In this document: one piece after another, positions 3,940 to 64,000 of the stretch
Layout of the letters: every line of letters starts with the position of its first letter
Position numbering within the stretch: position 1 is the first letter of the stretch
Assembly (NCBI GenBank): GCA_037379345.1
Contig: CM074517.1
Location: forward strand, 47,166,577 to 47,230,576
DNA from: Perna viridis
Lineage: Eukaryota
DNA length: 64,000 bases
Reading direction: 5' to 3'
Made by a program: the position numbers and the translations under genes
The notes under the pieces: model-generated
Seen by the model: the letters and a program-made list of their open reading frames with translations, nothing else
Database searches by the model: none
What the model was told of the DNA's origin: nothing

Positions 3940-4200
3940 GATTGAGCGGCGTTTTACTGAATGGAATGACATCATCATGGTTTCCAGTTAATCAAGGTGT
4001 ACGATAAGGTGGTGTATTATCTACCTTTTTATACAACTATATCTTGACGAACTACTGAATCGGCTTGAAGCGTCTAGCCACGGTCTAATAATCAAAGGCA
4101 TTAATTGTGGTAATCCGACGTTTGCAGATGACTTTGCATTATTGGCTCTTAGACCTATGGCTTTTCAGAATCTGATTGACATTTGCTATAACTATTCCAT
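3940..4200 (+). mobile_element. Decayed non-LTR (LINE) reverse transcriptase fragment
   Basis: VLLNGMTSSWFPVNQGVR*GGVLSTFLY / YLDELLNRLEASSHGLIIKGINCGNPTFADDFALLA: GVRQG and FADD motifs, with a stop and a frameshift. Confidence 0.8.
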
Positions 4201-4234
4201 AACTATTATGGTTATTTCAATTAAACTGTCATGG

Positions 4235-4492
4235 CCTGTGCAGGTCCGAGTGTCAAAAGAATAGGCCTGCAGCAGCGCTAAGCTTGTCGTAACACGGTGC
4301 ACCACTATGGTTTGCGGTCAGGTTTTCCGTATTATAGCCTGACAACCCCAGCATGTAACATGCCAGGGGTACCCCATTCCACCACCTGGGGCACACAACC
4401 CCGGCTAGGTTTCTGAGCACTATTTAGTCGCCTTTTACGACATGCTTAGCGCTGCTGCAGGCCTATTCTTTTGACACTCGGACCTGCACAGG
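4235..4492. repeat. Fold-back element with 58-bp inverted arms
   Basis: 4235-4292 and 4435-4492 are reverse complements with one mismatch; a diverged copy of the right part lies at ~5718-5800. Confidence 0.85.
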
Positions 4493-4919
4493 GGATGAAT
4501 AATGGGAACTGTGTGACTAATGTAAATTAGCAAATCCGATTAGGTAAAAAAATCTCGATTTCAAAATTTACGTTGAATTTCCAATTAATATAGAGCTCGT
4601 CGTGATCATCATCCCACAATCAATCGATCGTTGTTCATGTTCCAATTTTCGTCGATCACGGTCCAGTCACTCATCGTTTAAAAATTATCATTGTTAATTT
4701 GTATATTTTTTTTTTTACATTTTGTCATAGACCTGTAATTCAATTAAATTATTTAATTATAAAATTAAAGGTCTATGTTTCTGTTCTTAGTGTAAAAACG
4801 GTAACCGATAACTTTCAGATGTTTGGTAGTTCTCGCGAAGTTCAGGATTGACAAAATACTTTTTGAGTAAAAGCTACTTTTAAATAACACAAGGGTCACC
4901 AATCATTCTATAAAATGTT

Positions 4920-5430
4920 AAAATGGACAATTTTAGCATTAAATGGGTGACTGATACCCAAATATTTCGGTCATAATTCTTCAAAATACCAATTTTAGCA
5001 ACGAATATGAGAGTGAGCACTTCCAATTTACCTAAATATGTCCACTATTAGATTCCAAAAGGGTCTAATCTTAATGACTTATATAATTAATTTGTCAATA
5101 TAACTATCACATAGTGCTGCGACATATTAATTTGAGTAAACATTCTTTAAAAATGTCATATTCTTGCAAAATGTTTGAATGGGAGCACTTTTAATTTCAC
5201 AATTAATTTCAATGAGGGTCTAAAATTAAGGCTAAAATGCTAATTTTTCCATATAACTATCATATGGGTAACTGTGAGACATATGTTTCAGTCAAAATTC
5301 TTCAAAAATGTCATATTCCTGCAAATGTTCGCACACTTTTAATTTCGATGAAGGTCTCAAATTAATGAATAATATGCAAAATGTTTCAATATAACTATCA
5401 TGTGGGTGGCTGAGACACATTTATTTGAGC
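4920..5430. repeat. Degenerate ~150-165-bp tandem repeat (3-4 units)
   Basis: Recurring attctt(c/t)aaaa..., gagcactt..aattt, agggtctaa and atataactatca motifs. Confidence 0.6.
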
Positions 5431-5437
5431 CTGCACT

Positions 5438-5471
5438 AAGTCTAGCGCCCTAGACCACTCGGCCAGCTAGG
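5438..5471 (-). mobile_element. tRNA-derived SINE head remnant (A-box)
   Basis: Minus strand ctagctggccgagtggtctagggcgctagactt resembles a tRNA 5' half with the A-box TGGCCGAGTGG; no B-box or 3' half is present. Confidence 0.4.
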
Positions 5472-5809
5472 CTATATAAAAAATATAGCTTTCGCTGGCA
5501 GGGTCATTGCTCCTCATAGGATTAATCTAGGGCTGTAACTTAGTACACCATTTATGGTAGTACGGGACAGTTCATATAGGTGTTATTATGTAGGATAGAG
5601 GATCAAATTAATGATGCATGTCACAACAAATCAATATTATACAACGTCTCAGAATGTGACGACTCTATTCGCTACACTGCGCCATCGGATCAAATTGATC
5701 CGACATATTAACAGTTGTTCTGAGCACTATTTAGTGGCCTTCTACGACAAGCTTAGCGCTGCTACAGGCCTATTCTTTCGACACCCTGACCTGCACGGGG
5801 CGACGAATC

Positions 5810-7172
5810 CTTTAAAAAAACGGCAAAGTAATATTGTTCAGCATCATGAGATGGACCTATGCCGAAATTTTCAAAACGATTCGTCCACTGATGTAGGAGT
5901 TACGGCTCCTGAAACAGTTTTTTTTTTGGCATTGAGAGAATTCAATGAAAGTTGGCTTATTGTTGCTTATTGTTTCCCACACAAAATGACCATTGGGATT
6001 TTGATTTACTAAAAATTGAACATAGGGATCAGGAGGCAGTTTTTTTGCAATTAACTGAAGAACTATTATCTTTAGCAAAATTCCGGCAGGGTTATATTAT
6101 TAAACGTAATGGGATGGACTTGTACTGAAATGTTCAAAACATTTTGTCAACTCATGTAAGAGTTGTATCTCCTGAAGCATTTTTTTTTCACATGTACGCT
6201 TCTGAAAATCTTCTTTTCTAATATTATTTAAGATCATTCAATGAAAATAAGCACATTTGTTCTTTAGGGTGTGTGCTCAAAATGACTTATGTGATTTTTA
6301 ATCTGTGAATAGATACAGCTGCCATTACGTAAAATGGAATATAGGGGTTGGAAGATTTTTTTTTGCAAATAATTCAAAACCTGTTGTCATTAGCAAATTT
6401 ATATTGTTCAGCCTCATGAGACGAAGTTATGCTATAATTAGCTAAAGAGTTAATAGGCTGAAATAGGATTTATTGCCCTTGAAAGCATATTTTTATCACT
6501 TATACAACTTTAAAGATCTTCTTTGAAGCTATTGATGAGATACACTACATATATGCAAACTTGTTCATTAGTATCATGTACAAAATGACTTTTGGGATTT
6601 TTGATTTGTGTAAAAGCATCGCTGCTGCTTATAAAAATATAACAAAGTCATTGGTTGGCAATATTTTGCTATTTACTAAAAAAACTGTTGGCTTTAGTAT
6701 AATTCTGGGTTATTAATGTATTGTTGTTCAGAATTATGAGTTGGACATTCAAAATGTATTAGGAATTTGACAACCAATATAAGAGTTATGTCTTGAAACT
6801 TTTTTTGTTGTCTTGTTTTTTTTTTACATTCTAAAATGTTTGTGTCTGAAACCATTTAATATCATTTAATGAAAATAAGCACATTGGTTCTTAAGTATAT
6901 TGTGCTATGACATCTGATTTTTAATTCGTGAATAGATATGGCTGCCTCTACTAAAAACTGAACAAAGTGGTCGGAAGACATTTTTTTGAAAATAATTCAA
7001 AAACTGTTGCCTTTAGCAAAATTCTGGTACAGGTCATAAAAATACCATTAAAAGCATTTACTACATTTGACAATTAAGTCAATTTTAACTTAGCCTTCCT
7101 CATTCCTCAAGTTTTTGGAATAAGCAAATGGTTAACCAGATGAGCGATTCAGGCTCTCTTGAGCCTCTAGTT
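5810..7172 (+). mobile_element. Helentron/HINE-like non-autonomous element (degenerate internal repeats + 3' end)
   Basis: Recurring degenerate blocks (aaaactgttg..tttagca, gggattttttgattt, attgttcagc.tcatgag) and a 3' end cagatgagcgattc-aggctc-tctt-gagcct-ctagttt with a palindrome, resembling bivalve pearl/HINE elements (from recall). The 5' boundary is approximate. Confidence 0.6.
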
Positions 7173-7368
7173 TGGTCTGTATCTTCATTCGATGAAGTTT
7201 CAGATTTTTTAATCTAAAGAAGACATGTTTTTGCAAAAAATAACATATGTTTACTTAATTCCCTTATACCACCTCCACGAAAGATGACCAAAAAAAATTG
7301 TAAAATAGGTTTATTATAGGTTAAGTTTTTTTGATAACTTTATTTTTCATATTTTTGTTTATATTTTA

Positions 7369-7810
7369 CAATTGATTCGCTACGCTAGAGCAAGTACTGA
7401 ATACTCTGATTTCCTTGAACGCCATAAATATCTGCGTAACAGACTCTTGAATCAGGCTTATGAGAAAATGCGTCTTTGAAGGTCTCTTACCAAATTCTTT
7501 TTGAGATATCAGTCCTTGGTAGACATAATGCTCAGTTTGTTCTAAAACAATGAGTAATGATTGTTTTTTTTGTAATTTTCTCTTGTGTGTTGATGTGACA
7601 GCTGGTCTACTGATTATGACGCAATACCTTGCAAATGCTTTTTAATTATTTTGTTCGAAGTGCCTGTACCAAGTCAGGGCCATTGCGGTACCAGCTGCTC
7701 CGGTGGTGTAATATCTATTTTGCCAGGTTTATTTTTTTTACTTAACTTGATTATGAATCGAATTAAGTGTTCGATGTTGTTATCCTTTTTTCTGTATTAG
7801 CTGTAATTGT
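7369..7810 (+). mobile_element. Decayed 3' fragment of a second Penelope-like family
   Basis: Translates as QLIRYARASTEYSDFLERHKYLRNRLLNQAYEKMRL*RSLTKFFLRYQSLVD, homologous to the C-terminus of the family 1 RT. The 3' boundary is approximate. Confidence 0.75.
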
Positions 7811-7935
7811 GGGAAAATCTTTTAATACTCTTTAAGGTCCAAATTAGCTCAATGAACGGTAAAGAAGATATAACATATTCTTATATCAAGACGCGTCCGA
7901 TATAGATTATTTGACTTGCATATGTATCATTATAG

Positions 7936-8783
7936 CACAAGAAACGGCTTGTGAGAAAGAGAGAAGAGAAGCCATAAAACCGCACCAGGATTGGACAAAG
8001 AATTCCTGTATATGATAGCGACGGGAATTATGCTCCTCAACAATGTTCTGGATCTCAGTACGTAATCAATACACTGAAAATACTTCTGTCGGCTTATCAG
8101 ATATTCGCAGATTTTGTCAAATGAATATATAGTGTTTATTTTCAATGATAATGTGTTAAACTTGTCCAGTTTGGATTATTATTTTAAGGTGATGATCACA
8201 ATTTTAAGAATGGTTCCTTGTTTGGGAATCAAATTTAATGAAACACAAAAACAAATTTCTATAAAATGAAGCTTAAAAATAGAACAGTGCTCGTTTACAA
8301 AAGAAAAACAAATACATACAAACAAACAAAAAACGACAGACAAACAAACAATGAGAAGTAGATTTAACGAAAACAGTTTTATGTGACCGTCCTACTAAGG
8401 ATAAGTTTATTGGTCCTATACCGAAGGTAAACAATTTAGTCTTAAACTATAAAGTTTTAAGTTCTGTATAAGAATCAGGCCATGGGATGCACATCATATT
8501 TTTCACCTAAAAACAAATTAAACAAGCGTGATTCTGAAGAAACTATATTTCTGTTCCTACTTATTTTAGGGAATAACTTTTATAAACTTATAATAAATTT
8601 ACAAACATACAAATACGAGAGTGTGTCAAAAGTTTTTGAATGAAGAAAGAGAATAGAAAATTTATTGTATGAAGAAATCTGTTATTTATTCCTTTCCGTA
8701 TTTCAGATGTTACTGTGTTATGAAAGATGGCACCACGATAAACATTTTTGTTTCCATATCGGAGTCTAGCAAGCAGAACTGTA
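7936..8783 (+). pseudogene. Tg1-domain pseudogene A (partial duplicate of paralog B; exons 2 and 3 only)
   Basis: Exon-2 homolog 7936-8057 has a +1 frameshift (gccataaaaccgcaccagg vs B gccaaaagcagctccagg) and a Cys->Tyr change (tgt->tat). Exon-3 homolog 8707-8783 (CYCVMKDGTTINIFVSISESSKQNC) is intact. I found no exon 1 or exon 4 homolog. Confidence 0.85.
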
Positions 8784-9455
8784 GTAAGTTTTTCCATGTC
8801 ATTAAATGAAGAATAATTGTCAAAATGTTGTCAACAGTGATACAATGTGAATATGTTTCAATAACTCGTAATATATCAATGATATTATTCATCACCTTTA
8901 TTTTTTAGAAACAAAATACTATTCAACGACAGAATAATAGTTATGGAAGCCAAGAGGAGACATAGCAAAAAGTTATTTATGTCGTGTCTCCATACATATA
9001 GCGTTATCGCGATGGGCATCGTCCTTTTGCGCCAAATGGATAATTATCGTAGTAAAATTGCACCAAAAATTTGTTTTACGTGTAGTTCTTTTCCGCCACA
9101 AAACAGACTAACTTTCTGCGCCAAATACAAATAAGGAAATGAAATATCAAAAAGGTAAAAATCTGAAATAAAACGATAAAGCCAACAAAAACAATTAAAA
9201 AATGATTATGTTTAGGCAACAATTTCAATACCAACGCCAATAATTTAATCAATATTTAACAATTTTATAGACCACTATCTCCCCTTTTTTATATAAAAAT
9301 AAGACGTTTCATACATGTACATTTTTTTGATTTTTTGTTGTTGATACTTGCTGTCTTATCTTTTTAAACAAGACAATAAAAGTGTCCTCCGTCAAAATAC
9401 TGACTACGTAAACACTTCGTACGTCACAAACATTGCTATTTCACATCACTTCAGC

Positions 9456-9982
9456 ACATCCCTTCAGCATCTGCGTATGGAGTGTTCATATCACAAGTCA
9501 TACGTTATGCCAGAGCTTGTCGGAAATACGCAGACTATGTATCGCGCTAGAACTCTAACAAATAGGGTTCTGGAACAGGGTTATGTTGCTACAAGATTGA
9601 AGTCATTACTACAGAAGTTTTATGGTCGTCATCATGAACTCGTGGATCGTTATGGTGTATCCATCTGCACCATGAAAACTGATTTATTCAACGGGTCATA
9701 GTTTTCCTTTCCTTGTTTGCCTACCCCGGACATGACTTTTTATGAGCAACTCGGCGGGTGTTTCTAGAAAAGCAGAGGACGCTTACCCTACCGGTGCACC
9801 TGGTCCATGCTCCCAGTTTTTAGTGGAGTCCGAGTTGCTCATTTGCTTTTGTTACTTTGTATGTATGATTTTAGTTACTTTATGTTCTTTGTTGTGTATG
9901 TCTGTTTTCCGTGTATGGTCTTTGTCACTGGATTACATTCTTTTGATTACTGCTATAACCTTGGTTCCCTTGATTACTCTTT
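9456..9982 (+). mobile_element. 3' fragment of Penelope-like family 1
   Basis: Near-identical to 32733-33214 (..RARTLTNRVLEQGYVATRLKSLLQKFYGRHHELVDRYGVSICTMKTDLFNGS* plus tail). Confidence 0.9.
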
Positions 9983-12900
9983 AGTTCTTCAGTTGTACAA
10001 ATAGAATGTTACAGACTTGTAAGATTTCAAACTAGATAGTAATTTGAACGCATCATTACTTTATTTATTTGCACTTCAATCACAAACGTTTCTTAATACA
10101 ATACATCGTCATTTCTGCGTTTTAATGTATGCATAGTCAGTCTACCTTTCTCTACATGTATCAGAAACTGAAATGAATGTCCATATTGGTTTTCAATACA
10201 TTTCGGGTCGAGAGGAAGCAAAGCTCGACGTTGCTCTTGTTATGTCAGAATTTGTTCTAAAGGGGAGATGCTTTTTAAATGCAAAGAAAAGAGAAGCATA
10301 AACTATTTTTATTGTCTTGAGCCACTGGCCCGGAGTCTTCTATTTTCCCCTTTTAATACTCGGTACTTTGACTGTTTTAAGGACTACTCGGTACTTCGGG
10401 CATTGAGTACCATACCCTGAATCTTAAAAAAATAGTACTAGGTACTCCAAATATTTCATATTCGGTACTCAACGCTTATATCAAGCAGTACTCGGTACTG
10501 TTAATTTAAAAAGTTACAAATGTGTTTGATGATTCGTTCAATATTCCTCTGAAGTTTGATTTTTTTCAACAATATTTTGAAACAACTACCAACAACAATG
10601 TCAATGTCAAAAAATGTACACTGAGATACAAAATTAAGAGATGAAACTAACCCTGAAGCTAAAACACTGTACGGGTGCTTACTGATTTACAAAAGCAAGG
10701 ATATGGAACCAACCATGAAAAGTTCATGGAAATAAATACTAGTAATACATGACAAAATATTTCTAGTAAATAAGACACTCCCTTTAAGTGTATGCACATC
10801 CCAAAAAACTGATAAGAAATGCCAATTTAGTATTAAGTTTCTTATAAAAGGCCATATTTAAGGTATATTCCCTCTCCCCTTGCACTCGCAATATTTGAAT
10901 TTTTGCAATTAGTGACGGGTTTGAAATTTCAATTTTGTTTTGGTTTTGTTTTATTCGTTCAAATGGGCTCAATAAAAGTTGAATGAATTATTATTGAAAC
11001 AAATCACAGGGAAATAAATGAATGAGAATTAAACATTTTGTTGTGTTCACGTGGACCCCCACCCGGAACTTTTGATATGTTCAACATTTTATGAAACCCT
11101 TCACCAACAGAAACACAATGTAACACCCACTAGATAATCATAGAGCTCTGTGAAATAATCGCTTGATCAAATAACCATCTTGTTTCTTTAAACCAAGACC
11201 TAAAATTCGACTTTCCTTTGTCCGTACCGCCTCGATTGTTTTTGTATCCCCGGTATCATCGTATCCATATCCCCGAATGCCTGCCTGTAAACGGTGCCGA
11301 AACTGGAATATGCATGCTCCATTTGGGATCCTCACCCGCTGACCGCTGCCAGAACCTAGAGATGGCCGAGCAGCTGGATACATGTATGTCTACAACCAGT
11401 ATCAAACTTCCAGCAGGTGAAACTGTCATGATGCAATCACTACACTGGCTACACTTCAACATCGAAGAGTAAAAACCCGGATCATTATGTTTTATAAAAT
11501 CAGTAAGTAAGTAGCAGTTCCAATCACAGTTTTATTTCCTCCAGACCGTAGAACACGACAAGCTCAACCACACTCATACAGACACATTTGTTGGCTTCAG
11601 AAGATTGTTACAAATACTCATTTTCCCCTAGAACCATACTACAGTGGAATTTATTATATGTAAACATCAACAGCTAAATTAAGTTGGAACTTTTAAAGAA
11701 CAGCTGACTCCAGCTGTTCTTTGGACAATAAAATCATGTAGAAATTTAAACTAAATCCAGTAAAACTCTAAATATTTTTAATAACATGATTTTTTGTTTT
11801 TCATCACTATTTTTGGCGTTTGACTGGATAATTTTTACTACGCATGCGAAGCAGTTAGTTATCATCGAATATGTGATAATTGGATACCAGAAGATGGGGA
11901 CATCGATAACAAGCTAACAAAGGTTTTTTAAATAAATTATATCCACTTTTATATTTGAATAAAACGGACATTAACATGTTTTAAACAAAAAGGTTCTGCC
12001 CAAATGTTATTTTTTATCTCCCCATTGGTGAACAGGGAGATCAAATTGATTGCATGCCTAGTGAAGTGTCTAGTCGTAGAATAAAATTGTATGTAAGTTA
12101 TATAAAATTGACTGAATCTACTGTTTTTTAAAGCATTTTTTTCAAAAGTTCCCTATTTTGAAAATTCGTTTTTTTTTATACTTTATACCGTATATATCTT
12201 TATATAATGTTTTCTTCGCTGTTTTCAAAATTCAATAAACATGCTCTTTTTTAAAGAAATAAATTGGCATACATTACGATTGATGGGGTTGATATTTTGT
12301 TTGTTAATACCTTGTACAATGCAGTGTCTACTCATTTGTACACATGCCATGGCGATCGTCTTTGTTCATCATTTTGCGTTATAATTAATCATGATATATT
12401 AAATTTGCCTCATGTTGACAATACAGCCAAAAAAGGACAACAGTTGGTATACTGACCAAACTCCTGACCTATGACCTCTAGGTACAGCGGGTGTAAGGAC
12501 TAAACATAGAACAAATAACAATAAAAACGTTTACACACACGTACATGTAATCATTAACAATGTTACTTGTACATGTAAGTAGTAAATACATGTACCAAGA
12601 AAGGTCAACCGGCTGAAAATGTCACTAGTCTCAGCTATATTAATTTGTTGGGCACTCTAGTGGTAGATTTAATTGTGTATAAGTCAGGTGGAAACTGTTA
12701 GAAGAGATGTTTAACCGTGTAATACGAATATTGGATAGTTATAATAAAATGGAATAGTTCATAGATATTGTATTGTTTTCTTTTTTATGTGTTCGCATAT
12801 GGTAATATCATTGTATATTTTAGTGTGCAATGCACATAGTTTTATGGCATCAATGAAACACAACAAAATTCATTTGAAACTATGTACCAATATTCATTTC

Positions 12901-13036
12901 AGTTACCATGTGCACTTATTATATTTTTAAATGGTATTTTTGTGCCATTTTACAATATTTATTGTGTTTAAAGAAAATAAATAAATTGCTTTGCGATTTG
13001 GTGTGGGGTCAACCGACATTGAATTATAAGAAACAA

Positions 13037-25746: not shown

Positions 25747-27496
25747 TCTCGATGTTGTGATATCAAACAGTGGATGCTGATGAGGGGAACTACCATATAA
25801 CATTATTTTTATAGATAAATTACCAATTAATTTGATGACAATCATATAAGTAATAAATACCGGATGTTACATGTTCTTTTGTCGTATTTCATCGCCGTCG
25901 GTGACTTACACGACTTTACCACCATATGGAACTCAGTCAAACATGATAGACTGACACCTAAAATAGTTATAATTAAATATCAACTAACAGCACATGCTGA
26001 AAATAAGGTTCAATCCCTAAAAACAACACAAAACTAAACAAACAAGGCAGCCCAGGCAAATAACATTGAAACAAAATAATATAATTAATAAAAAAAAATA
26101 AATTGCAATCGTTTCCATTTTTAACCAAAAAAAAGAGAAAGAAAAAATACATTTATTTTACTGTGAAAATAAATCATATATCTTTATATTTATATTGGGA
26201 AAGGACAAAAATTAAACAATTACATTAAGTCGTCCTAACGACTCACGGTTTGAAGAAGTTGCAAAACAATATTTAAAAGAAAAAAAAACTTCATTCAAGC
26301 TAGAGGCATATTTTCCATAATATTCATATCAGCTCTTATTATTCCGTAATCTAAGCTTAAACATGTTTTATACTACACAATAGAATGGGAATTAGGCAAT
26401 AATTAGTATACAATCATAGACAATAACATCGAGTTCCGAAAGTTTTAATGCTTAAAAATCAGTATGAAATATATGTCGGTACTCCTAATTTAAAACTGTA
26501 CAGTCATTTCATGTACATCAGAAAGTTGTGTTTTGTGTTAAAAATACTTTTTATTTTCGTACGTTTGTGATTTGTAATACACTGGACATGAATTGAATAG
26601 TTTGTGTATTGTTCTATTGAACTGAAATCAATAATATGTATTTATATAGTTCTTTCTTCGTCATTATTCGGCGGCACATAGTGCCCAGACCGTAATAATT
26701 GAAATAAACATTGAAGTCCTGTTTATAACCATCTTCCGATGCTTTAATCCTTTAGAACGACTTGCTCAATCGTTTTACAAGACGACGAATGCATCAATTT
26801 GAATTGTTCAAATCCGATAACAGCATTACAATTTTTACATTGTCATTGCGGTCATGATTCTGTTACCAAGATTTTCAGTTTGTGGTTGTTTGTCCAAATT
26901 TCTAAATTCCTTGGAACAAATATTGCGAAGGTAATTATTCCAAATGTTTATTTATTTTCAAATTCGTGAGGAATTACATTTCTAAAAACACAAAATTTGA
27001 TCAGTATTTGACAATAATTGACACTTAGCAACTAAAACGGCAGAATTACAATGAAAGTTTTCCTGAGAAAATTTTTAAGTTCTCATTTATTCAGCGTAAT
27101 CAAGGGAACGTATACCAACTTAGCAACCAGAATATAACGAGTGAAAAAAATTGTGGCTAAACCAATGACGGTTTTGAAATGTAGTCGAGTAGAGATGAAG
27201 AAAAATTTTTTTTATAAAAAATGTCTATTTTCCACTTTTTCACTTCTCAACAAATGAAAAATTACGAAAATGAATAAAAACTATAAAACTGATATTTTTT
27301 TAGCCAAACGAATATGTTCTTCTGTTGATTAGTTTAACCAGATGGACCATGACATAATCCAAAAGTTATACATCATGTTACATTGATGCAGGAAATATGT
27401 GGCCAAAACAGCGTATGTTATAACTGAAGCTGTTGCAGTAATGTCGGAATTTGCCATTTATTATGCAATCGAAATAAATTGTTTGACAACAAGCGT

Positions 27497-27518
27497 GTAC
27501 AGTACTGTATAAATGACC
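27497..27518 (+). promoter_or_regulatory. TATA-box core promoter of paralog E
   Basis: tgtacagtactgtataaatgac, ~55 bp upstream of the ATG. Confidence 0.55.
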
Positions 27519-27564
27519 AGTCGCCCAAAAGTTCATCAGCTGATATTTTATATTCGCTAAGACG

Positions 27565-29557
27565 ATGGATCAACTTATTCTTTGTCTTTATGTGGTTATG
27601 ATTGCTGTTTTTTATGTTGGTGCTACTGGTAAGTTATGGTATACTATGTTGAATGTTGTATTTAAAAGCAATGATTGGAGGTCTAATCATGTTTCTGCTT
27701 AGGTTACATTTACTAAATATTAATATTATAAAGTAGTTTTCTAAATAAGTATTTAACATTTCTCCATAGTTTTATATTTGTCATTTACGTATACAAAATA
27801 CCTGGTGAATTACCCATAGTAAACTAAAAAAATACGAATTTGTCTAATGCCTCAATAATCTGATGAATCTTTTGATCTAGTCCAAGAAACTGAATGCCAA
27901 AGAGAGTTGAGAGTAAATACTGCCGCCTACAATGCAGTACCACCAAGAGTAGGACAGAGAATACCAGTATGTGATACCAATGGGAATTATGCTCCTAAAC
28001 AATGCTCTGGTTCCCAGTAAGTTTATTACAAGAATAATTTGGCCTTGGTTTCAAAAAGTACTTACTTATAAAATAGTTTGATACATATTTGTTGATTTTG
28101 CTATTTGTTGCAAAAAAGTGATAAAATGCATTTGTACTTTTACTTACTTTTGATTTCAAAATAAAGTATAAAAAAATATTAAAAGTTATTCACTTCATTG
28201 AATTTCATTTTTGTTGGTTTTTTCGTATTGACCAAGTTGTTAATGGATTAAACATCTTATTTATAGATGTATAAAATTGCATTCCTTCATAAACAAGACA
28301 TTACAATACTTGGGTCATCTATAAATTCTGGAAAACACTCGTTATTTATATACTAACAAATCTGAGGTGTATCATTCGTGTTTCGACTTTGAAACTCTAA
28401 TGCAGTAAAACTGACACATGGAGTCGAAATTGCCAATTGCGGCTTTCAACCATCAACGTGATCAATATCAATATTCGAGGGAATAGGTGCAACTGATAAC
28501 TTTATTCTCTCAAACTTGTTCTTTTAAACATATGATGTCAAAAATGAATAGAATATAGCAGATAATAACGGTTCTCTCTTTTCAATCAGCTCAATCTTTT
28601 GTCACAGCAATGGTAGCCATGTATGTGTACGGTATTTTCAAAGAATTTACTTACTTGCAAAAACTGTCACCGTGGAGGCCGTAGAAGATAACCAAAGAGA
28701 CATATGCTAATTAGATTGGAATCATATTAATATAATATCGTTTTTATGTTACGTTTTTTAACATTGAGTTTTAATTGATTTAACATAAAATCATAAGACG
28801 TTTAAAAAGTCATTCTCCTTTGATTTTTAAAGAATTCTATTAAGAATAGCGTTCTTTTTTTCAGATGTTACTGCGTTGATAGCGATGGTGTTGCTATTGA
28901 TGGTTACAGTGTTAACAATTGGGAAGCTGTAGATCAAAACTGCAGTAAGTAAATGTGTTTAAGTTTAAAGTAAAATGTTCTGAAGTATTTGTCCAGACAT
29001 TTCATCCTTTAATTATAAATAAAACTAAAACAACGAAATTTAGTCCCCAACGAAAACGTAACTTTCCATTCGTTTGTATGATGAATTTATAAATTCTATG
29101 AATTCAAAAATCTTCGAACTGTCGTTTTTTATAACAAAAACAAGAAAAAACACGAAAATTAGTACCCACAAATTTAAGTTCTTTCACAGTATAACAGTTT
29201 CTTTGACTATGTGGATAATTTGTTGATAGGTATCGTTATCTTCATTATCAGTTCTCACGATTAGTCTAGTTTGTTCCTCCTGATGCTTTCTGTTCTGATT
29301 GCAAAAGGTATTTCACTACTATAACATTATTCAAGCGTGTTGTTCTGGTAAACACATCTTAAATTTCAGACTGTGCAAGGAACAAGGCCGAATATTCAGC
29401 TCTTGGTATCATTGGCAAAATGTATAGGTGTTTACCTAATGGAAACTACGACCCAATCCAGTGCACCGGATCAGTCTGTTATTGTGCTGACCATAACGGA
29501 CAGAAAATAGGAACAGCCACTGTTAATATTGGACTGATAGGAGAGCTGAACTGTTAA
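27565..29557 (+). CDS. Secreted two-domain thyroglobulin type-1 protein, paralog E, 4 exons
   Basis: Exons 27565-27628 (MDQLILCLYVVMIAVFYVGAT), 27881-28016 (VQETECQRELRVNTAAYNAVPPRVGQRIPVCDTNGNYAPKQCSGSQ), 28865-28944 (CYCVDSDGVAIDGYSVNNWEAVDQNC), 29370-29557 (NCARNKAEYSALGIIGKMYRCLPNGNYDPIQCTGSVCYCADHNGQKIGTATVNIGLIGELNC*). TATAAA at ~27508; AATAAA at ~29577. Confidence 0.92.
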
Positions 29558-30924
29558 AACATTCATTAAATCTATAAATAAAATGTTAAATACATGGCAT
29601 CATATTTTATTATTATTATTACAAGCTTAAGTTGCCTTTGTTTGCAGTTTGTAGCTTTTTATATGACGAGAATGTGTATGGCGAATATGTCAAAGAAATA
29701 ACACCTCCAGCGGGATGGAAAATATCAGTTCAATGCCATCGAATGGTCTTCAATGAACAACAAAGAAACCCTCATACCACAGGGCAAGCTTCAGCTGGCC
29801 CCAAAACATCATTAGACACAGGTACAGTTAAAGAGTTGCTACTATATACTCAAGTAACATAAAAATAAACAGAATATGAAAACGAAACAAGACCTAAAGA
29901 GGCCAGAAGTTCACAACTTGGCGCAAAAATGCGGCGGGGTTAAAGAACTTTGGCGTGATCACAACCGCCACCCCTTAACAATCTGGCCACTGTGGACAAA
30001 ACATATTATACAAATAAACCCGTCCGTCTAAAAATCAGTTCAGAAAGGTCTGAAAACCTTGTTAAAACTGAAATAAAGAAACTGATTACAATTTACTTAA
30101 ATGTAAAAACTAATGACTACTAGCAGTTAAATGACAGGCCAGCATCAGACCAGTTTAAACCTACAAATAGTTATGTCCACATCGTATGTAAAATCAATTA
30201 CAATGCCTCCCATGCGGGGTTGAGAACCATAAGTTATACAACATAGCCTATGTCATGCCAAACACTGCTTTAAATATAGTGTTTTAATTTCTGTTATTTG
30301 CAACAATACACTTTATTAAACAATTTTGTTTATCATTGATTCTACCGCCACAAGGTATGTCTGAGTGACAAACTGAGTTTGCAAGCATATGGTATTCAGG
30401 CTAACATTTAAGCAAACAACAAAATAGGATTTTTTTTATTTAAGCTGATGGCTATGGAAAGTAATCAATAGTTTAAGGGTTACATTGACAAACTACATAA
30501 AACAATTAAATGGTAGTACTACATTGTTATCGCTACAAAACTATATTCAAAGGCAACATACTTCAACAAGAAATACCTCGGTCCATGGTTTTAAATACGG
30601 TTGTTACCAAAGTTGCTTTACATTAGCCTATTTTTGTGTGTGTGTTTTTTTTAAGGGTTCCTATATGTTATTCGTTCTTTTCAAGTTTTCTTTTCATTTC
30701 TGATGTCCTTCTTAAGATACTAACTCTTTATTATACATATCTAAGTCTAACGACTAACGAAGAGCTCGAAAAGGGCCATTTTTCCAGCTTGTAATCATAC
30801 GTATTGGTTTTGGCAATCAGTGTTGTCGAGACAGTTGGTTTCAGCGCACTCCCTCTTCCATTCCGGCGTAAATACACCAGTGGTGATTAAATAGCATTTG
30901 CTTGCTATTGTGTCATAATCGGAA

Positions 30925-31072
30925 AATCAGCAGTTACATCAGCACAAAGAATAGTTTACAAAAATAACAATTACTCATTATTTTAAGAAGAAACTGATTA
31001 TTTTTTTTACCAAGGATTGATATCTAAAAAGACTTTGGAAAAAGACGTTTTGAGACGCATTTCCTCATACCC
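30925..31072 (-). mobile_element. Penelope-like family 2 fragment
   Basis: Reverse-complement similarity to ~16978-17135 (atgaggaaatgcgtct...agatatc..tccttggta...tgtgctgatgt). Confidence 0.65.
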
Positions 31073-31544
31073 CTGAGGAAATGTTTAAAATGATTTCAAA
31101 ATGAAAACAATAGGCACCAAATTATGGAACTTATCATCCTCCTTAGGAATTTTAATTTAAGAGATATATCCTTTTCATTTGTCTTTGATTAATACTTTTT
31201 TTTTCTTCACAAAAATTATTTTGAAAAGGTAATTAGTCTTTAAATTCTAATTTTTTAATAATCCCTCCATTCATATTTGTATATGATTGCCATTATGTCA
31301 TTAGTATGCAGGAAAGGTATGATGGTATGCAAGAACCTTATTTTGGCCGACAAAGTAGAATAATGGTAATTATGATATAATGTATATTGATAAGTAATGG
31401 TGCATCTGTAAGAGTACGTAGAAAGCAGCTTAAGATGCCTTTTCGTTAGATATGTCACTACTTTAAGTTGAATTAAAACGAGAACAAGAAGACATTGATT
31501 CTCTGTCAGAGTGGTAAAGACCGTGAGGTCTTTAATTTGGAACA

Positions 31545-33214
31545 AAAGAAAGTTTTAAGTAGGTCAATGAGTGCTAAGGCTACATCAGTTTTCAAAGACC
31601 CCGATGTAGCAAAAACTGTCTACTATACATGACAAGTATGTTGTCGTACCAACAGACAAAGCCCAAAACAACATTTTTTTGTCTGCAAAACGTTTTATAT
31701 CCAATGTTTATTATCAGAGGTAGACGTAGAAAATAATAGCAGTGATAGGACCTACACTGCTACCACTCTCTCCAAAGAAGAGTTTGCAGAAAACCATAAA
31801 TATGTGCTATCGTCTTTTGGTCTCTCTACCAAGGACGATGATTGTGATTTACCGTCTATGTACTGGATTCCTAAACTTCACAAGAATCCATACAAACAAC
31901 GTTTCATAGCTGGATCTGCAAAATGTACCACCAAACCTCTTTCAAAACTTTAACTTCTATACTCACAACTGTCAAAGAGGGTCTACAGTCCTACCACAAC
32001 ACTTGCTACTCGCGTAGTGGTATTAATTCAATGTGGATCCTGAAAAATTCGAAAGATCTTTTGGAGACAATCAGTTTAAGACTATTATCTGAATATAATA
32101 GCATTAAAACCCATGTTTTTTCAACACTGTATACTTCTATTCCCCATACTCAGTTAAAATCCCGACTTAAAAACATTATACATCGTTGTTTTTCCAAAAA
32201 AGATGGTACACCTAGATACAAATATACAGTTCTTGGTAGAGATTCCTCATACTTTGTAAGAAATAATCCCAAATCATCTTCCAAATATACAGAGGAAGAT
32301 GTTTACAAAATACTGGAATTTTTAATCGACAACATATTTGTCCAGTGTGGGACGTGTTTTTCAACAAACGGTCGACATTCCAATGGGAACAAATTGTGCT
32401 CCTTTACTTGCTGACCTATTCCTTCACTCTTATGAGGCTGACTTTATAGCTGATCTGATCAGAAAGAAAGAATATCGTTTGGCTAGGTCCTTCGATCTGT
32501 TTCCGCTACATAGATGACGTATTATCTTTAAACAATCCTAATTTCGGGGATTTGATACATCGCATCTACCCAAAAGAACTTGAGATAAAGGATATTACAG
32601 ACACTGTAACGTCAGCCTCATATCTTGACCTACACTTAGAAATCGACGGTAAAGGAAAACTGTTGACCAAACTTTACGACAAACGTGATGACTTTTCATT
32701 CAGAATTGTTAACTTTCCTTTCATCTGTGGCAACATCCCTTCGGCTCCTGCGTATGGAGTGTTCATATCACAACTCATACGTTATGCCAGAGCTTGCCGA
32801 AACTACGCAGACTTTTTGTATCGCGCTAGAACTCTAACAAATAGGCTTCTGGAACAGGGTTATGTTGCTACAAGATTGAAGTCATCACTACAGAAGTTTT
32901 ATGGTCGTCATCATGAACTCGTGGATCGTATGGTGTATCCATCAGCACCATGAAAACTGATGTATTCAACGGGTCATAGTTTTCCTTTCCTCGTTTGTCT
33001 ACCCCGGACTTGACTTTTTATGAGCAACTCGGTGGGTGTTTCTAGCAGAGGACGCTTACCCTACCGGTGCTCATTTACTTTTGTTACTTTGTATGTATGG
33101 TTTTAGTTACTTTATGTTCTTTGTTGTGAATGTCTGTTTTCCATGTCTGGTCTTTGTCCCTGGATTACATTCTTTTGATTACTGCTATAACCTTGGTTCC
33201 CCTTATTACTCTTT
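31545..33214 (+). mobile_element. 5'-truncated, frameshifted Penelope-like retroelement (RT + 3' tail), family 1
   Basis: PLE RT motifs across frameshifts: VVVPTDKAQNN, MYWIPKLHKNPYKQRFIAGS, STLYTSIPH, IPMGTNCAPLLADLFL, FRYIDD, SYLDLHL..LYDKRDDF, AYGVFISQLIRYARAC. The ORF ends at ~32979 with no C-terminal GIY-YIG domain; a ~235-bp tail follows. Confidence 0.9.
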
Positions 33215-33563
33215 CATCATAGATCCTAGAAGACTTTGGATGATTTGTCTGTGGTTGGAGTTTTTAACTTCCGTATTTCCATATCAGAACTTCTCGGCCA
33301 TGTTACTTTTGTGTAACATATAGCTTTTGTAAATAATTTTCTGCCAGACCATCAGTGAGTCTAGTGTTATAGGTTGAATTCGTATAGATTACCTTCATTA
33401 GTACTTCGTCCTATATAAATAGGTAACGTCAGTTTTTTTTTCTGTGTGCATCAGAATTAGAAAATATAGTACTTGTTACTTTGGAATTAAAGAGTTCAAT
33501 GACAACGTGACATGCAAACATCACATTTTATTATTACTATAACGTAATGCTAGATTAAAAACA

Positions 33564-34896
33564 TTAACAAGTAAGTTCTTCAATCGATCCAATATGAACT
33601 GTTCTCTACCCGACTTGTTCTCCGTTCTGATTAACACAATAACAAACTGATCCTCTGCACTGGAGTGGTTCATAGTTTCCATTGGGCATACAAGAAAATA
33701 TTTTGCCAATCATTCCTGTTTCTTAACATTCTTAATAGAATGTTGAAATGCATCTTGTTTGATACTCTTTTTTATCCAGAGCACTGCTGAGGGGCGTAAT
33801 ACCCTTCACTATCACACACGGGTTTTCTCTGGCCAATGATCGGAGGATCTGTATTACTGGCGGCTATACTCTTTTATTAGTTTTTTCTGACTTGGGGCTA
33901 CTGGGGACAAGGTTTGCTAATTGACAAAATGTAGTAAATTGATACACATTGGTTAACACCCTGATTTCTTAAAGATTTTCCCAATAACATTTTAAATGTT
34001 AAATAGTTAATTTATCTTAAATAACCTACTTTAGCAGGGATTATGATTTTCACTGTTGATGCTCGATAAAATGCTATATGATATTGTATTAATCCAGTAT
34101 CAGTTTGCTTGAATGCACTGCTTTATTATTATTTTTTAATGTTACTTATATAATGGATGATCTATAGGCAGCATGAAAAACTAAAAACTAAACGATGGAA
34201 GATCTATAGGCAGCATGAAAACTAAAAACTAAACAATGGAAGATCTATAGGCAGCATGAAAAACTAAAAACTACACAATGGAAGATCTATAGGCAGCATG
34301 AAACCTAAAAACTAAACGATGGAAGATCTATAGGCAGTATGAAAACTAAAAACTACACAATGGAAGATCTATAGGCAGCATGAAAAACTAAAAACTAAAC
34401 GATGGAAGATCTATAGGCAGCATGAAAACTAAAAACTAAACGATGGAAGATCTATAGGCAGCATGAAAACTAAAAACTACACAATGGAAGATCTATAGGC
34501 AGTATGAAAACTAAAAACTAAACGATGGAAGATCTATAGGCAGCATGAAAAACTAAAAACTACACGATGGAAGATCCATAGGCAGCATGAAAACTAAAAA
34601 CTAAACGATGGAAGATCTATAGGCAGCATGAAAAACTAAAAACTACACAATGTTGAACTATGTAAAAGAATCTCACTAAAATATGTATGGAGCTCACCTT
34701 AGGTAGTCTGGATGATTATATTTCATAAAAAGTAATATTTACAAGATGGTGTAAATATAAGCAACTATTTATCTTTAAAAATGTAACGACAAAATATTTA
34801 CATGAATTACATATCATCGGCTGATGCTGCACAAATCATGCTCAAACCGTAAAACACGGCAGCTGCAAGCACCACGGCTGTCGTTATATGACACAT
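33564..34896 (-). pseudogene. Tg1-domain pseudogene F
   Basis: Signal-peptide-like exon ~34896-34811 (MCHITTAVVLAAAVFYGLSMICAASADD). Exon-2 remnant 33916-33772 (..SIAASNTDPPIIGQRKPVCDSEGYYAPQQCSG*) is frameshifted and stopped. Exon 3 is missing. The exon-4 remnant follows within ~60 bp (TGMIGKIFSCMPNGNYEPLQCRGSVCYCVNQNGEQVG*RTVHIGSIEELTC*) with an internal TAG at 33606-33608. Confidence 0.85.
34153..34651. repeat. Minisatellite, 41-42-bp unit, ~12 copies
   Basis: Unit gatctataggcagcatgaaaa(a)ctaaaaacta(a/c)ac(g/a)atggaa; lies in intron 1 of pseudogene F. Confidence 0.95.
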
Positions 34897-62000: not shown

Positions 62001-62046
62001 TAAGGATCAGTAGGACAGTATACGTTTTCAGTTCGAATTTTTTTAC
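38038..62046 (-). CDS. Giant transmembrane mucin (Thr/Ser tandem-repeat domain + SEA-like + EGF + TM + cytoplasmic tail), ~6800 aa, 5' exon(s) not identified
   Basis: Exons: 62046-42334 (6571 codons; acceptor ...ctttcag, donor gtgagt), 41940-41882 (LEDIFKNATGYSGIVIRNI), 41368-41181 (SVFGNVVSVKYDVCINGTV...), 40613-40517 (EGF: CFMYDYQRTCQNGGVCFVNTDGNPQC), 39774-39568 (RCVSPYTGDVC..., TM IVIPSAVAGGLLLAALVGCCCWLLCC, RRKK stop-transfer), 39256-39138 (tail), and a probable last exon 38105-38038 (GYNKEPDMSLWEMHLQDEIRRA*). Splice phases are mutually consistent. The last exon is less certain because the tail exon can also end at TAG ~39133. Confidence 0.88.
39866..40232. mobile_element. MITE of the same TIR family in a mucin intron
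   Basis: tgtaagaatcaggcaa ... cacccactgcctgattctt inverted termini. Confidence 0.55.
42600..61870 (-). repeat. Coding tandem array, 672-bp (224-aa) unit, ~29 copies
   Basis: Identical motifs recur at multiples of 672 bp (shadow ORFs at 48975, 49647, 53007 and 55023 differ by 672, 3360 and 2016). The reading frame is open throughout. Confidence 0.97.
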
Positions 62047-64000
62047 CTGAAAGTTTAGAAAAATACTAGAAATCGGTTTACGATTGTAGGCGATAAATAA
62101 CAACTAAAATTGGTTATGTGGCAAATTTCCACTAACATTGCTTAGTCGACAAATTACAACTTACTTTGTTCGGGCAACAATTTGCAACCAATATTGTTCA
62201 GACAACAAATTACAACTGACATTATTCAGATAACATATAAAAACCAACACTGTACATGCGACAAACTCCAGAAAACAATTTTCAGGCGACAAACTACAAC
62301 AAACAGTGTGGAACGCAAACTAAAGCTAACACTCTTCAAGCAAAATACATAAGCCTTGGCATTGATTTTTGTATATTTTTCTTTGTCGTTTGACGAACCA
62401 AAATAAAATGACTTCCATGAAGATATATATTTCCAACACCTTAGAATACAACACAGATTATATACAAAGCACTTTGAGACATTTATATACATTCAGTTTC
62501 TGCGCTTGGTGATTAATGATTTTTTTTTTAAAAAATCATGTAAGTAGAAATTTATCGTCATATGTCAACAGGCATTGTTTATTTCGAACTAATCGGATTA
62601 TGTGTTCTGTTAGCTCACTTTTACTCTTTAAAGAGTGGTTTTAATGGTTCATCTTAAAAAGAATATATGCAGCCGAATGTAATTTTTGATAATGATAACA
62701 AAAGGGAAATGATAATTTTATTTTATTTATTTGATCTATAGGTATTTTTAACATCTCAAAGTATTTAATCCCACATTCTAATAATATCTATTGAAACTAT
62801 CATAATATTTGTGCAGTAACCTCAAATAAGTATGAAAATATAAACAATGTTTAGTTACATATCACGTATGTCATATTCAATTTAAACGAAACTATTATAT
62901 GGAACCAAAATGAGAGGATGGTATCTTTTGAATCACATTGCTGACCATCTATACATTCGCCCGTCCAAACATCATTCATTCCATCAAACCGATTATAATT
63001 GCAAATAATCTCGTCTATGAATTGGTGGATTGATTTATAAAATTTTGTTTGTGATTCTGATGTGGTATATGTTGTAAGCGATCTTGTTTGCTGTCTGATA
63101 TCAACTTCTTGCCTAGCAAGACGACGCGTGCCATTTTTAGTATTTTTTCTTTAATGTGTTAAAAAGGAATGCAACAAATAACAATTTTAGTAGTGAAATA
63201 TAGTTCCAAATATGCATTGTATTCCTTAGAATTACTCTACAACAATGATTGGAATTAATGTTTAAATCTCTGTTTATAATTTCGCAGAAAATTTCCTACG
63301 AAATTATAGTTAATTAAAATTAGGTCATTCGAAAGCACTCTATATCAAAACAAAGCACATGTAATAATCAACTTCTTCTAAAGTAACATTTTTCTAAAAA
63401 AAAAGTAATACGTTAATTAAGAAAACGAGTATATACATCTCTGATTTCTGAAAATATATCTTTGCCGCACCATTAGTATTTGGACACTTGATTTTAAGAG
63501 CTTGTATAGTGTTATCAATGATCTTTGATGCGTTTCTTCGTTGATTTACAAGTGAAAACGGTGGTCCATAGTGTATTAATTTTGTTAATTTGTTTGTATT
63601 TAAGACTTAAGATAACCTTTATTGAAATAATCATGACTGGACGAAGGTTATACAATTAAACATATTTGAAGAATTTATTTCCCAACTAAAACTTTCATTC
63701 AGTAGACAACCATTGAATTGATTTAAAATGCAAATTTTAAAGGTAAAAAAATTACTTGACATTTGTAATCCTGATTTATATGAATGAAAAATGCCTATCT
63801 TTTATTCCTTACTTTTATACTCACCGAATAGCGTTATGCTGCTGGCTTGTGTAAGAAGATTATCCTAAATCTTTTTAAGCTTTTAAAGAAGGCATTTGAA
63901 CTCTGTCATATAATGCTTTGATTATTTTTGACTAATGTTATTCAATTAATCTCTACAACATTTATTTACTGAATAAATCAACATTCAAAATATAAGAAAA

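What the first reader, a model, noticed from the sequence alone, without database searches (positions are those of the whole stretch)
7936..34896. Hidden six-member cluster of secreted double-thyroglobulin-type-1 genes undergoing birth and death
Seen: six paralogs in 27 kb in mixed orientations (+,+,+,-,+,-). The four intact copies share one exon plan (signal peptide / Tg1 first part / Tg1 second part / whole second Tg1; phases 1,2,1); two copies are dead. None appears as a full ORF. Known: Tg1 domains in equistatin, the invariant-chain p41 fragment and saxiphilin inhibit papain-family cysteine proteases, and equistatin also inhibits cathepsin D. Inference: a lineage-specific, diversifying family of small secreted protease inhibitors or defence effectors, probably uncharacterised.
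Basis: partly seen in the sequence, partly recalled or inferred. Interest (0 to 1): 0.78.

Follow-up and report, generated by a model that had tools for sequence, protein, structure and literature searches.

The report
Tandem cluster of two-domain thyropin genes
The window holds a real tandem array of small secreted proteins made of two thyroglobulin type-1 domains: four intact genes, two of them shown to be spliced and transcribed, plus two dead copies. They belong to an old, widespread invertebrate family of likely cysteine-protease inhibitors, so this is an ordinary though uncharacterised find.

Summary
Six paralogous loci (+,+,+,-,+,-) lie at 7936-34896.

- **Intact genes:** B, C, D and E splice into complete ORFs of 149-155 aa. 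Each has a signal peptide and two Tg1 type-1A domains with 12 conserved Cys. Intron phases are 1,2,1 with GT..AG introns.
- **Transcription:** RNA-derived contigs from four studies carry every predicted junction of C at high depth and of D at low depth. B and E were not tested.
- **Dead copies:** A is a truncated, frameshifted copy of B. F has stop codons and an internal deletion.

- **Not a new kind:** homologues 50-57% identical, named "equistatin-like", occur in Mytilus, Mactra, gastropods, cephalopods, nemerteans, an annelid and a brachiopod. Mytilus and Mactra share the exon plan.
- **Larger array:** at least five or six more loci lie 25-57 kb upstream, and one dispersed paralog lies 20 Mb away.
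- **Lineage-specific but old:** the array forms its own clade in the tree, but dS is saturated.
- **Not diversifying:** pairwise dN/dS is 0.13-0.27, which indicates purifying selection.

The closest characterised protein is the tick two-domain thyropin IrThy, a cathepsin V/K/L inhibitor with the same Cys-x-Cys domain junction. Protease inhibition here is inferred, not shown. I class this as a new member of a known kind, of modest interest.

The parts
7936..8783 (+). Copy A, a pseudogene. Exon-2 remnant 7936-8057 and exon-3 remnant 8707-8783. No exon 1 or exon 4.
   Evidence: Exon 2 is 96.7% identical to B exon 2 but carries a 1-nt insertion (frameshift) and a TGT-to-TAT change at the second Cys. 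Exon 3 is 90% identical and open. Homology to B runs 7266-9013 (80-90%) and then a repeat element follows at 9456-9982. BLAST finds no B exon 1 or exon 4 in 4000-16000.
16610..19233 (+). Gene B, 149 aa. Exons 16610-16673, 17547-17667, 18424-18500, 19046-19233.
   Evidence: Complete ORF after joining. AG acceptors and GTATGT/GTACGT/GTAAGT donors. PF00086 E = 2e-9 (exon 4) and 7e-7 (exon 2). Transcription was not tested.
20470..21998 (+). Gene C, 151 aa. TATA-like box 20470-20477; RNA contigs reach the first base laid, 20500 (5' end not determined). Coding exons 20531-20582, 20850-20985, 21270-21349, 21765-21952. AATAAA at 21981; poly(A) tail after 21998.
   Evidence: Spliced RNA contigs in four runs of four studies carry all three joints (GT..AG) at word depth 90-1023. 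One contig ends in a poly(A) run after 21998. PF00086 E = 8e-9 and 7e-8. One extra, unpaired Cys lies near the C-terminus.
23210..25746 (-). Gene D, 155 aa. Exons 25746-25683, 25373-25238, 24246-24167, 23397-23210.
   Evidence: All three joints (CT..AC on the + strand) are seen in RNA contigs at depth 2-5. Complete ORF. PF00086 E = 2e-9 and 9e-8.
27565..29557 (+). Gene E, 155 aa. Exons 27565-27628, 27881-28016, 28865-28944, 29370-29557.
   Evidence: Complete ORF, all donors GTAAGT, PF00086 E = 1e-8 and 3.5e-7. Closest paralog is C (73% aa identity, dS 0.77). Transcription was not tested.
33567..34896 (-). Copy F, a pseudogene. Exon-2 remnant 33870-33775 abuts exon-4 remnant 33782-33567. A possible exon 1 lies at 34896-34833.
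   Evidence: Two stops in the exon-2 remnant. Three stops and a roughly 36-nt insertion in the exon-4 remnant. Exon 3, both flanking introns and the adjoining exon ends are deleted, with a frame change. About 960 bases, holding an 83-bp tandem repeat (34152-34652), separate the exon-2 remnant from the possible exon 1, which, if that exon is real, argues against a retrocopy.

Best explanation
The region is part of a tandem array of thyropin-type genes (MEROPS family I31). Each intact gene has four exons: signal peptide, first part of Tg1 domain 1, second part of Tg1 domain 1, and the whole of Tg1 domain 2. Each encodes a secreted protein of about 14 kDa with two consecutive Tg1 type-1A domains joined by a Cys-(Lys/Asn)-Cys junction. 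By analogy with the p41 invariant-chain fragment, equistatin domain 1 and the tick two-domain thyropin IrThy, each domain most likely acts as a competitive, tight-binding inhibitor. It would insert a wedge of three loops (L1, L2, L3) into the active-site cleft of papain-like (clan CA) cysteine cathepsins. The paralogs differ mainly in the L1- and L3-bearing segments, so they may differ in target range. Shown here: the genes, their splicing, transcription of C (strong) and D (weak), the Tg1 sequence and fold, and the age and selection regime of the copies. Inferred: secretion, from hydrophobic N-termini only, and protease inhibition. The array grew by old tandem duplications and inversions within this lineage, with continuing gene death (A, F and some upstream copies) and at least one recent partial duplication (A from B). 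My confidence that these are real two-domain Tg1 genes is about 0.95. My confidence that they inhibit cysteine cathepsins is about 0.55.
For: Pfam PF00086 hits lie above cut-off on every exon 2 and exon 4. Complete ORFs have 12 invariant Cys, QC and C-Y-C-[VA] motifs and hydrophobic N-termini. All junctions of C and D are seen in RNA contigs of four studies, and C also has a poly(A) tail and AATAAA. The AlphaFold model of domain 2 has pLDDT 82.5, and its best PDB match is 1ICF chain I, the p41 fragment bound to cathepsin L, followed by saxiphilin Thy1 domains and thyroglobulin. PDB sequence searches match thyroglobulin, saxiphilin, p41 and IrThy-Cd 8R6T. RefSeq calls the nearest homologues 'equistatin-like'. 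IrThy (PMC10889554) has the same layout: a signal peptide and two Tg1 domains joined by Cys-Lys-Cys, 166 aa. Both of its domains inhibit cathepsins V, K and L competitively with Ki of 27-800 nM. Purifying selection (dN/dS 0.13-0.27) shows the proteins are functional. Variation is concentrated in the C1-C2 and C5-C6 segments (50-57% identity), against 67-100% in the core.
Against: No biochemical data exist for any mollusc member in the open-access library searched. Many Tg1 domains do not inhibit proteases (IGFBPs, nidogen, Trop2/EpCAM and most thyroglobulin repeats), and loop sequences do not predict activity or specificity. Identity to p41 and saxiphilin domains is only 24-36%, and Foldseek E-values are weak (0.015 and above) because the domain is small. 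The signal peptide was judged by eye and by hydrophobicity only. B and E have no transcript evidence. The joined full-length proteins were not run through any public search or fold tool.
Confidence: 0.6

Rival explanations
1. The proteins are non-inhibitory Tg1 proteins that bind a ligand or matrix component. One option is an IGFBP-like binder of insulin-related peptides. Another is a structural component of mucus, byssus or another secretion.
For: The conserved relatives of about 230 aa in other molluscs, a brachiopod and the dispersed paralog H carry an N-terminal Cys-rich module. This module gives weak hits to IGFBP (PF00219) and amfpi-1 (PF12190), so the layout recalls IGFBPs. IGFBP C-domains and Trop2/EpCAM are among the structural matches. 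A giant Thr-rich mucin-like gene lies 7 kb downstream.
Against: B-E lack the N-terminal module, and no such exon was found in the window or in the 76.6 kb fetched upstream of it. The PF00219 hits are below Pfam's cut-off. PF12190 is itself a protease-inhibitor family. The best structural and architectural matches (p41, IrThy) are proven inhibitors.
Confidence: 0.2
2. The proteins are protease inhibitors, but of another class. One or both domains target aspartic proteases (cathepsin D, as equistatin domain 2 does), metalloproteases (as reported for testican), or foreign proteases from pathogens or food, rather than the animal's own cysteine cathepsins.
For: Thyropins differ widely in specificity, and equistatin has domains selective for cysteine or aspartic cathepsins (introduction of PMC10889554). 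The two domains of each protein differ strongly from one another, and the paralogs differ in the loop-bearing segments.
Against: Nothing in the sequence points to a non-cysteine-protease target. The only characterised short two-domain thyropin inhibited no aspartic or serine protease.
Confidence: 0.15
3. The loci are decaying relics or chance Cys-rich ORF fragments, not working genes.
For: Two of the six copies are dead, and several upstream copies carry stops.
Against: Four copies keep complete ORFs, canonical splice sites and all 12 Cys despite saturated dS, with dN/dS of 0.13-0.27. C and D are spliced exactly as predicted in RNA contigs of four studies.
Confidence: 0.03

Closest known systems
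IrThy, the two-domain thyropin of Ixodes ricinus saliva (PMC10889554; PDB 8R6T for its C-domain)
   Same: Both are short secreted proteins, 166 aa against 149-155 aa here. Both have a signal peptide followed by exactly two consecutive Tg1 type-1A domains and nothing else. The domains are joined by Cys-x-Cys: Cys-Lys-Cys in IrThy and in B and D, Cys-Asn-Cys in C and E. The family profile matches 8R6T at E = 9e-4.
   Different: Sequence similarity is low. IrThy's C-domain has a changed Cys spacing and disulfide pattern, whereas both domains here keep the canonical QC ... C-Y-C-V spacing. IrThy is a parasite saliva factor aimed at host cathepsins, and no such ecological role is evident here. The inhibitory activity of the window's proteins is untested.
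'Equistatin-like' or Tg1-domain-containing proteins of other Lophotrochozoa (for example Mytilus edulis P0163, M. californianus XP_052062991.1, Mactra antiquata KAL4229461.1, Tubulanus, Lineus, Owenia)
   Same: They share the two-Tg1 architecture, the C-x-CAR(D) junction and a size of 147-162 aa. They are 50-57% identical to B-E. Mytilus and Mactra share the exon break points. Tandem neighbours also occur in Mactra, with four consecutive locus tags.
   Different: The window's copies form their own clade. The sampled Mytilus gene has no Tg1 neighbour within 10 kb on either side. These are automatic names only; none has been characterised.
Equistatin (Actinia equina) and the p41 invariant-chain fragment (PDB 1ICF)
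   Same: They share the Tg1 type-1A fold, and 1ICF chain I is the top structural match of domain 2. They are the prototype cysteine-cathepsin inhibitors that act through the three-loop wedge.
   Different: Equistatin has three domains and p41 has one, embedded in CD74. Identity is about 27%.

Membership tests
Thyroglobulin type-1 domain (Pfam PF00086), subtype 1A | Match to the Pfam model above the gathering score | tested here: met
   Exon 4 of B-E scores 34.9-37.2 bits and exon 2 scores 29-32.3 bits, against a cut-off of 20.6. The genome-wide six-frame scan also hits them.
Thyroglobulin type-1 domain (Pfam PF00086), subtype 1A | Six Cys per domain with the QC and C-W/Y-C-V motifs | tested here: met
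   There are 12 invariant Cys columns in B-E. Q-C is present in both domains, with C-Y-C-V in domain 1 and C-Y-C-[AV] in domain 2.
Thyroglobulin type-1 domain (Pfam PF00086), subtype 1A | Tg1 fold: N-terminal helix, beta-hairpin and three loops | tested here: met
   The model of domain 2 of C has pLDDT 82.5, with helix 5-11 and strands 29-32, 35-39 and 45-52. All of the top 33 PDB matches are Tg1-bearing proteins, with 1ICF_I first. Domain 1 was not modelled because it is split over two exons.
Thyropins (MEROPS I31) | Demonstrated inhibition of a cysteine or aspartic protease | not testable with these tools
   This needs recombinant protein and enzyme assays.
Thyropins (MEROPS I31) | Reactive-site loops L1-L3 competent to fill a cathepsin active-site cleft | tested here: inconclusive
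   The loops are present and are the most variable parts. No sequence rule predicts activity, and no complex was modelled.
Short two-domain thyropins (IrThy-like) | Signal peptide plus exactly two consecutive Tg1 domains, 180 aa or less, with no other domain | tested here: met
   The ORFs are 149-155 aa. No other Pfam family hit any exon piece. The signal peptide was inferred from hydrophobic N-termini only.
Short two-domain thyropins (IrThy-like) | Cys-x-Cys junction between the domains, carrying the inter-domain disulfides in IrThy | tested here: met
   C-K-C is found in B and D and C-N-C in C and E, split by the phase-1 intron. This compares with Cys79-Lys80-Cys81 in IrThy. Disulfide connectivity itself is not testable here.
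Short two-domain thyropins (IrThy-like) | Modified Cys pattern of the C-domain | tested here: not met
   Domain 2 keeps the canonical 1A spacing, C...C...QC..C-Y-C...C. This feature is particular to IrThy rather than to the architecture.
Equistatin | Three Tg1 domains | tested here: not met
   There are two domains only.
IGFBP-like proteins | N-terminal IGFBP (IB) domain upstream of the Tg1 domain | tested here: not met
   tblastn found no N-module exon in the window or in the 76.6 kb fetched upstream of it. The module exists in paralog H and in relatives of about 230 aa, with only weak PF00219/PF12190 scores.

The most novel reading that the evidence does not exclude
The whole array of about 12 loci, including the upstream subfamily whose last exon ends right after the fourth Cys of domain 2 (a conserved 'half Tg1' ending C-x-G-Y-x-C-stop), is a lineage-specific radiation of thyropins with new target specificities. 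Possible targets are proteases of pathogens, parasites or ingested algae. On this reading the truncated form is a previously undescribed minimal thyropin module that keeps only the helix, L1 and the L2 clamp.
Probability: 0.15. Interest if true: 0.55.

Novelty: new member of a known kind. Interest (0 to 1): 0.3.

Why it matters
Thyropins are poorly studied outside vertebrates, and the first invertebrate two-domain member was characterised only in 2024. This array offers a compact natural panel of diverged two-domain thyropins, with transcript-verified gene models for two of them. It could be used to test how changes in the L1 and L3 loops shift cathepsin specificity, and to ask what bivalves use secreted cathepsin inhibitors for, such as digestion control, mucosal defence or anti-parasite defence. 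It does not open a new kind of biology. Tandem expansion with pseudogenes is common for secreted inhibitor families in bivalves.

Tried and rejected
- **'Diversifying selection':** rejected, because pairwise Nei-Gojobori dN/dS over the mature region is 0.13-0.27 and dS is 0.77 to saturated. Site models were not attempted, since four saturated sequences would not support them.
- **F as a processed retrocopy:** considered because exon 2 abuts exon 4. I rejected it because the break is not at the exon borders and about 960 bases separate the exon-2 remnant from a possible exon 1.
- **Whether the window's own proteins are in the public protein collection (the 'hidden' claim):** a profile that included the window's exon pieces returned no hit above 57% identity.
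- **Finding equistatin among the hits:** naming ten three-domain hits gave Nematostella, Limulus, Latimeria and others, but not equistatin.
- **Literature on mollusc thyropins or 'equistatin-like' proteins:** nothing relevant was found. One search was mis-specified and useless.
- **Pfam on the repeat-element ORFs between the genes:** no family was hit.
- **The search of earlier findings for thyroglobulin, equistatin or thyropin:** nothing was found.
- **Left out by rule:** the joined (spliced) full-length proteins were built only inside scripts from /data, for the ORF check, paralog alignment, dN/dS, local BLAST against fetched proteins and the tree. They were not sent to any public search, exact look-up or fold tool. 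Searches were done exon by exon, by reference.
Full report
**What is there**

The window is G000:C7:47166577-47230576 of a 723-Mb eukaryotic genome. It is AT-rich (30-37% GC in the region) and has no N. A six-frame motif scan and tblastn with the exon peptides of one copy find six related loci between 7.9 and 34.9 kb.

The Pfam model PF00086, searched over the whole genome in six frames, hits eight exons inside the window above its cut-off. The exon pieces scanned by reference give E = 2e-9 to 1e-8 for the exon that encodes the whole second domain. They give 7e-8 to 7e-7 for the exon that encodes the first part of domain 1.

**Gene models**

The sequence around each exon shows AG acceptors and GTAAGT, GTATGT, GTACGT or GTGAGT donors. 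The phases are 1, 2, 1. Hydrophobic ATG-initiated first exons ending in a phase-1 donor lie 270-870 bp upstream of exon 2 in B, C, D and E.

Joined inside a script, the four models give complete ORFs of 149, 151, 155 and 155 aa. Each has a hydrophobic leader and then two Tg1 type-1A domains. Twelve Cys columns are invariant. Q-C and C-Y-C-V/A motifs are present, and a Cys-(Lys/Asn)-Cys junction is split by the third intron. The predicted mature proteins are about 14-15 kDa. C has one extra Cys near its C-terminus.

**Transcript evidence**

Twenty public runs of the same organism hold part of the stretch 20500-25800. Sixteen of them hold about the share expected for exons only, and the tool guesses these to be RNA.

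I laid the contigs of four such runs, from four studies, on the stretch. They show joints at 20582|20850, 20985|21270 and 21349|21765, all GT..AG, at contig depths of 90-1023. One contig ends in a poly(A) run after 21998. This is 12 nt downstream of an AATAAA at 21981. A TATATAAA box sits at 20470; the contigs reach the first base laid (20500), so the 5' end of the RNA was not determined.

Gene D shows 23397|24167, 24246|25238 and 25373|25683 (CT..AC, that is GT..AG on the minus strand) at depths of 2-5. So C is abundantly expressed and D weakly, with exactly the predicted splicing. These are contigs, so depth is only a rough guide.

**The dead copies**

A is a partial duplicate of B. Homology runs 7266-9013 against 16784-18728 at 80-90%.
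- Its exon 2 is 96.7% identical to B's, but has a 1-nt insertion and a Cys-to-Tyr codon.
- Its exon 3 is open.
- No exon 1 or exon 4 can be found.
- A repeat element follows at 9456-9982.

F keeps remnants of exon 2 and exon 4 that abut each other out of frame.
- It has two and three stops respectively, and an insertion of about 36 nt.
- Exon 3, both flanking introns and the exon ends are deleted.
- About 960 bases with an 83-bp tandem repeat separate the exon-2 remnant from a possible exon 1. If that exon is real, this is a genomic deletion and not a retrocopy.

**The array is larger than the window**

PF00086 also hit two places 39-50 kb upstream. I fetched the 76.6 kb upstream of the window. 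It holds at least five or six more related loci at C7:47,109,890-47,142,263.

These form a subfamily whose last exon ends right after the fourth Cys of domain 2 (C-x-G-Y-x-C-stop). This ending is seen in three copies, of which G3 and G6 show no stops in the exons found and the third (G4) has stops in its exon 3; other loci are fragmentary or degenerate.

A family-specific profile of domain 2 finds only one further full match in the genome, at C7:27,085,670. This dispersed paralog H has the same three Tg1 exons plus an upstream exon for a Cys-rich N-terminal module.

**Relatives**

A HMMER search of 1.84 billion representatives with the domain-2 profile gave 909 hits at E <= 0.001. Many are two-domain proteins of 143-235 aa that end with this domain.

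Named examples are 'equistatin-like' proteins of Mytilus californianus, M. edulis, Lineus and Tubulanus. Others are unnamed or hypothetical proteins of M. coruscus, M. galloprovincialis, Mactra antiquata (four consecutive locus tags), Ruditapes, Mercenaria, Mya, Dreissena, Solemya, several gastropods and cephalopods, a chiton, Lingula and Owenia.

The best identities to B-E are 50-57%, to Mytilus. The exon break points are the same in Mytilus edulis and Mactra. The four-exon plan is therefore shared with two distantly related bivalves, Mytilus and Mactra.

Most relatives of about 230 aa carry an N-terminal module with weak hits to amfpi-1 (PF12190) and IGFBP (PF00219). Two of them pass the PF12190 cut-off.

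**Evolution**

I built an ML tree of 53 proteins. Rows for H and G2, G3 and G6 were joined with X at split codons, and G rows fill under half of the columns. B-E plus G2, G3 and G6 form one clade (100/93). Its sister holds H, an unnamed 232-aa protein (P0088) and the Mytilus proteins. Together these form a clade (100/93) within a poorly resolved lophotrochozoan bush.

So the array is a lineage-specific expansion relative to everything sampled, but not a recent one. Pairwise dS over the mature region is 0.77 for C against E and 1.4 to saturated for the rest. dN/dS is 0.13-0.27. The only young event is the partial copy A.

Differences among paralogs are concentrated in the C1-C2 (helix plus L1) and C5-C6 (strand plus L3) segments. 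These are 50-57% identical, against 67-100% between C2 and C5. Two allelic differences in C seen in the RNA contigs are both non-synonymous (K to N and S to G in exon 2). That is too few to interpret.

**Structure and function**

AlphaFold2 on domain 2 of C, with a 40-row alignment, gave pLDDT 82.5. Foldseek against the PDB ranks the p41 fragment in complex with cathepsin L (1ICF_I) first. Saxiphilin Thy1 domains, thyroglobulin, IGFBP C-domains and Trop2/EpCAM follow. E-values are weak (0.015 and above) but probabilities are near 1, as expected for a 61-residue domain. Sequence profiles match the same PDB entries and IrThy-Cd (8R6T).

The closest characterised protein by architecture is IrThy of Ixodes ricinus. 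It has 166 aa, a signal peptide and two Tg1 domains joined by Cys-Lys-Cys. Both domains are competitive inhibitors of cathepsins V, K and L, with Ki from 27 nM to about 800 nM. It shows no activity on aspartic or serine proteases (PMC10889554). That paper also notes that short two-domain thyropins are mostly an invertebrate feature.

I therefore commit to secreted cysteine-cathepsin inhibitors as the most likely function (about 0.55). The rivals are a non-inhibitory binding role (0.2) and another protease class (0.15).

**Limits**

- The joined full-length proteins were not sent to any public search, exact look-up or fold tool, by rule. The work was done exon by exon, by reference.
- Whether the genes are annotated in the source genome cannot be told, because the tools may withhold that genome's records.

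**Verdict**

This is a new member set of a known kind, of modest interest.

Noticed in passing
G000:C7:47109890-47142263 (loci L001, L004, L002, L005; 25-57 kb upstream of the window): At least five or six more paralogous loci (G1-G6) form a divergent subfamily. In three copies the last exon stops right after the fourth Cys of domain 2 (C-x-G-Y-x-C-stop), giving a conserved truncated 'half' Tg1 domain. G4 has stops, and G1 and G5 are fragments.
   Followed up: partly
L009 (G000:C7:27082000-27091999), minus strand, exons near 7907-7806, 5346-5215, 4206-4123, 3856-3671: A dispersed paralog H has the same three Tg1 exons plus an exon for an N-terminal Cys-rich module. Aligned pieces are 61-76% identical to an unnamed 232-aa protein (P0088). 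The relatives of about 230 aa across molluscs and Lingula give weak amfpi-1/IGFBP hits for this module. This may be the conserved ancestral form.
   Followed up: partly
window 42316-62103, minus strand: A single open frame of 6,596 aa, 39% Thr, is built of 672-bp (224-aa) repeats. It explains the extreme GC/AT skew at 42-62 kb. It is a mucin-like gene 7 kb from the thyropin array and was already noted as another finding.
   Followed up: partly
window 22093-22446 and 22624-22977 (inverted pair); also 9782-9982, 19346-19521, 33036-33323: A short repeat of about 200 bp is present many times in the window at 90-95% identity. RNA-derived contigs cover it at summed depths of 25,000-155,000. Its ORFs hit no Pfam family. 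It is probably an abundant transcribed mobile element.
   Followed up: partly
window 9348-9982 and 31742-33323: A larger repeat element shared between the two places (86% over 530 bp) has ORFs of 117-163 aa and no Pfam hit. It sits just downstream of where the homology of pseudogene A to B ends, and it lies between E and F.
   Followed up: partly
window 25251-25266 (exon 2 of gene D): One low-depth RNA contig of run X8 shows four A>G differences within 16 bases on the plus strand (T>C on the gene's strand). This could be an allele, cross-laying of a paralog, or editing of an antisense RNA. Depth is only 2.6.
   Followed up: no
window 20902 and 20945 (exon 2 of gene C): Two differences between individuals seen in high-depth RNA contigs are both non-synonymous. 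K to N lies in the L1 segment, and S to G lies next to the second Cys. No synonymous difference was seen in the coding part.
   Followed up: partly
window 34152-34652: An 83-bp tandem repeat of about six copies (95% identical) lies between the exon-2 remnant of pseudogene F and its possible exon 1.
   Followed up: no
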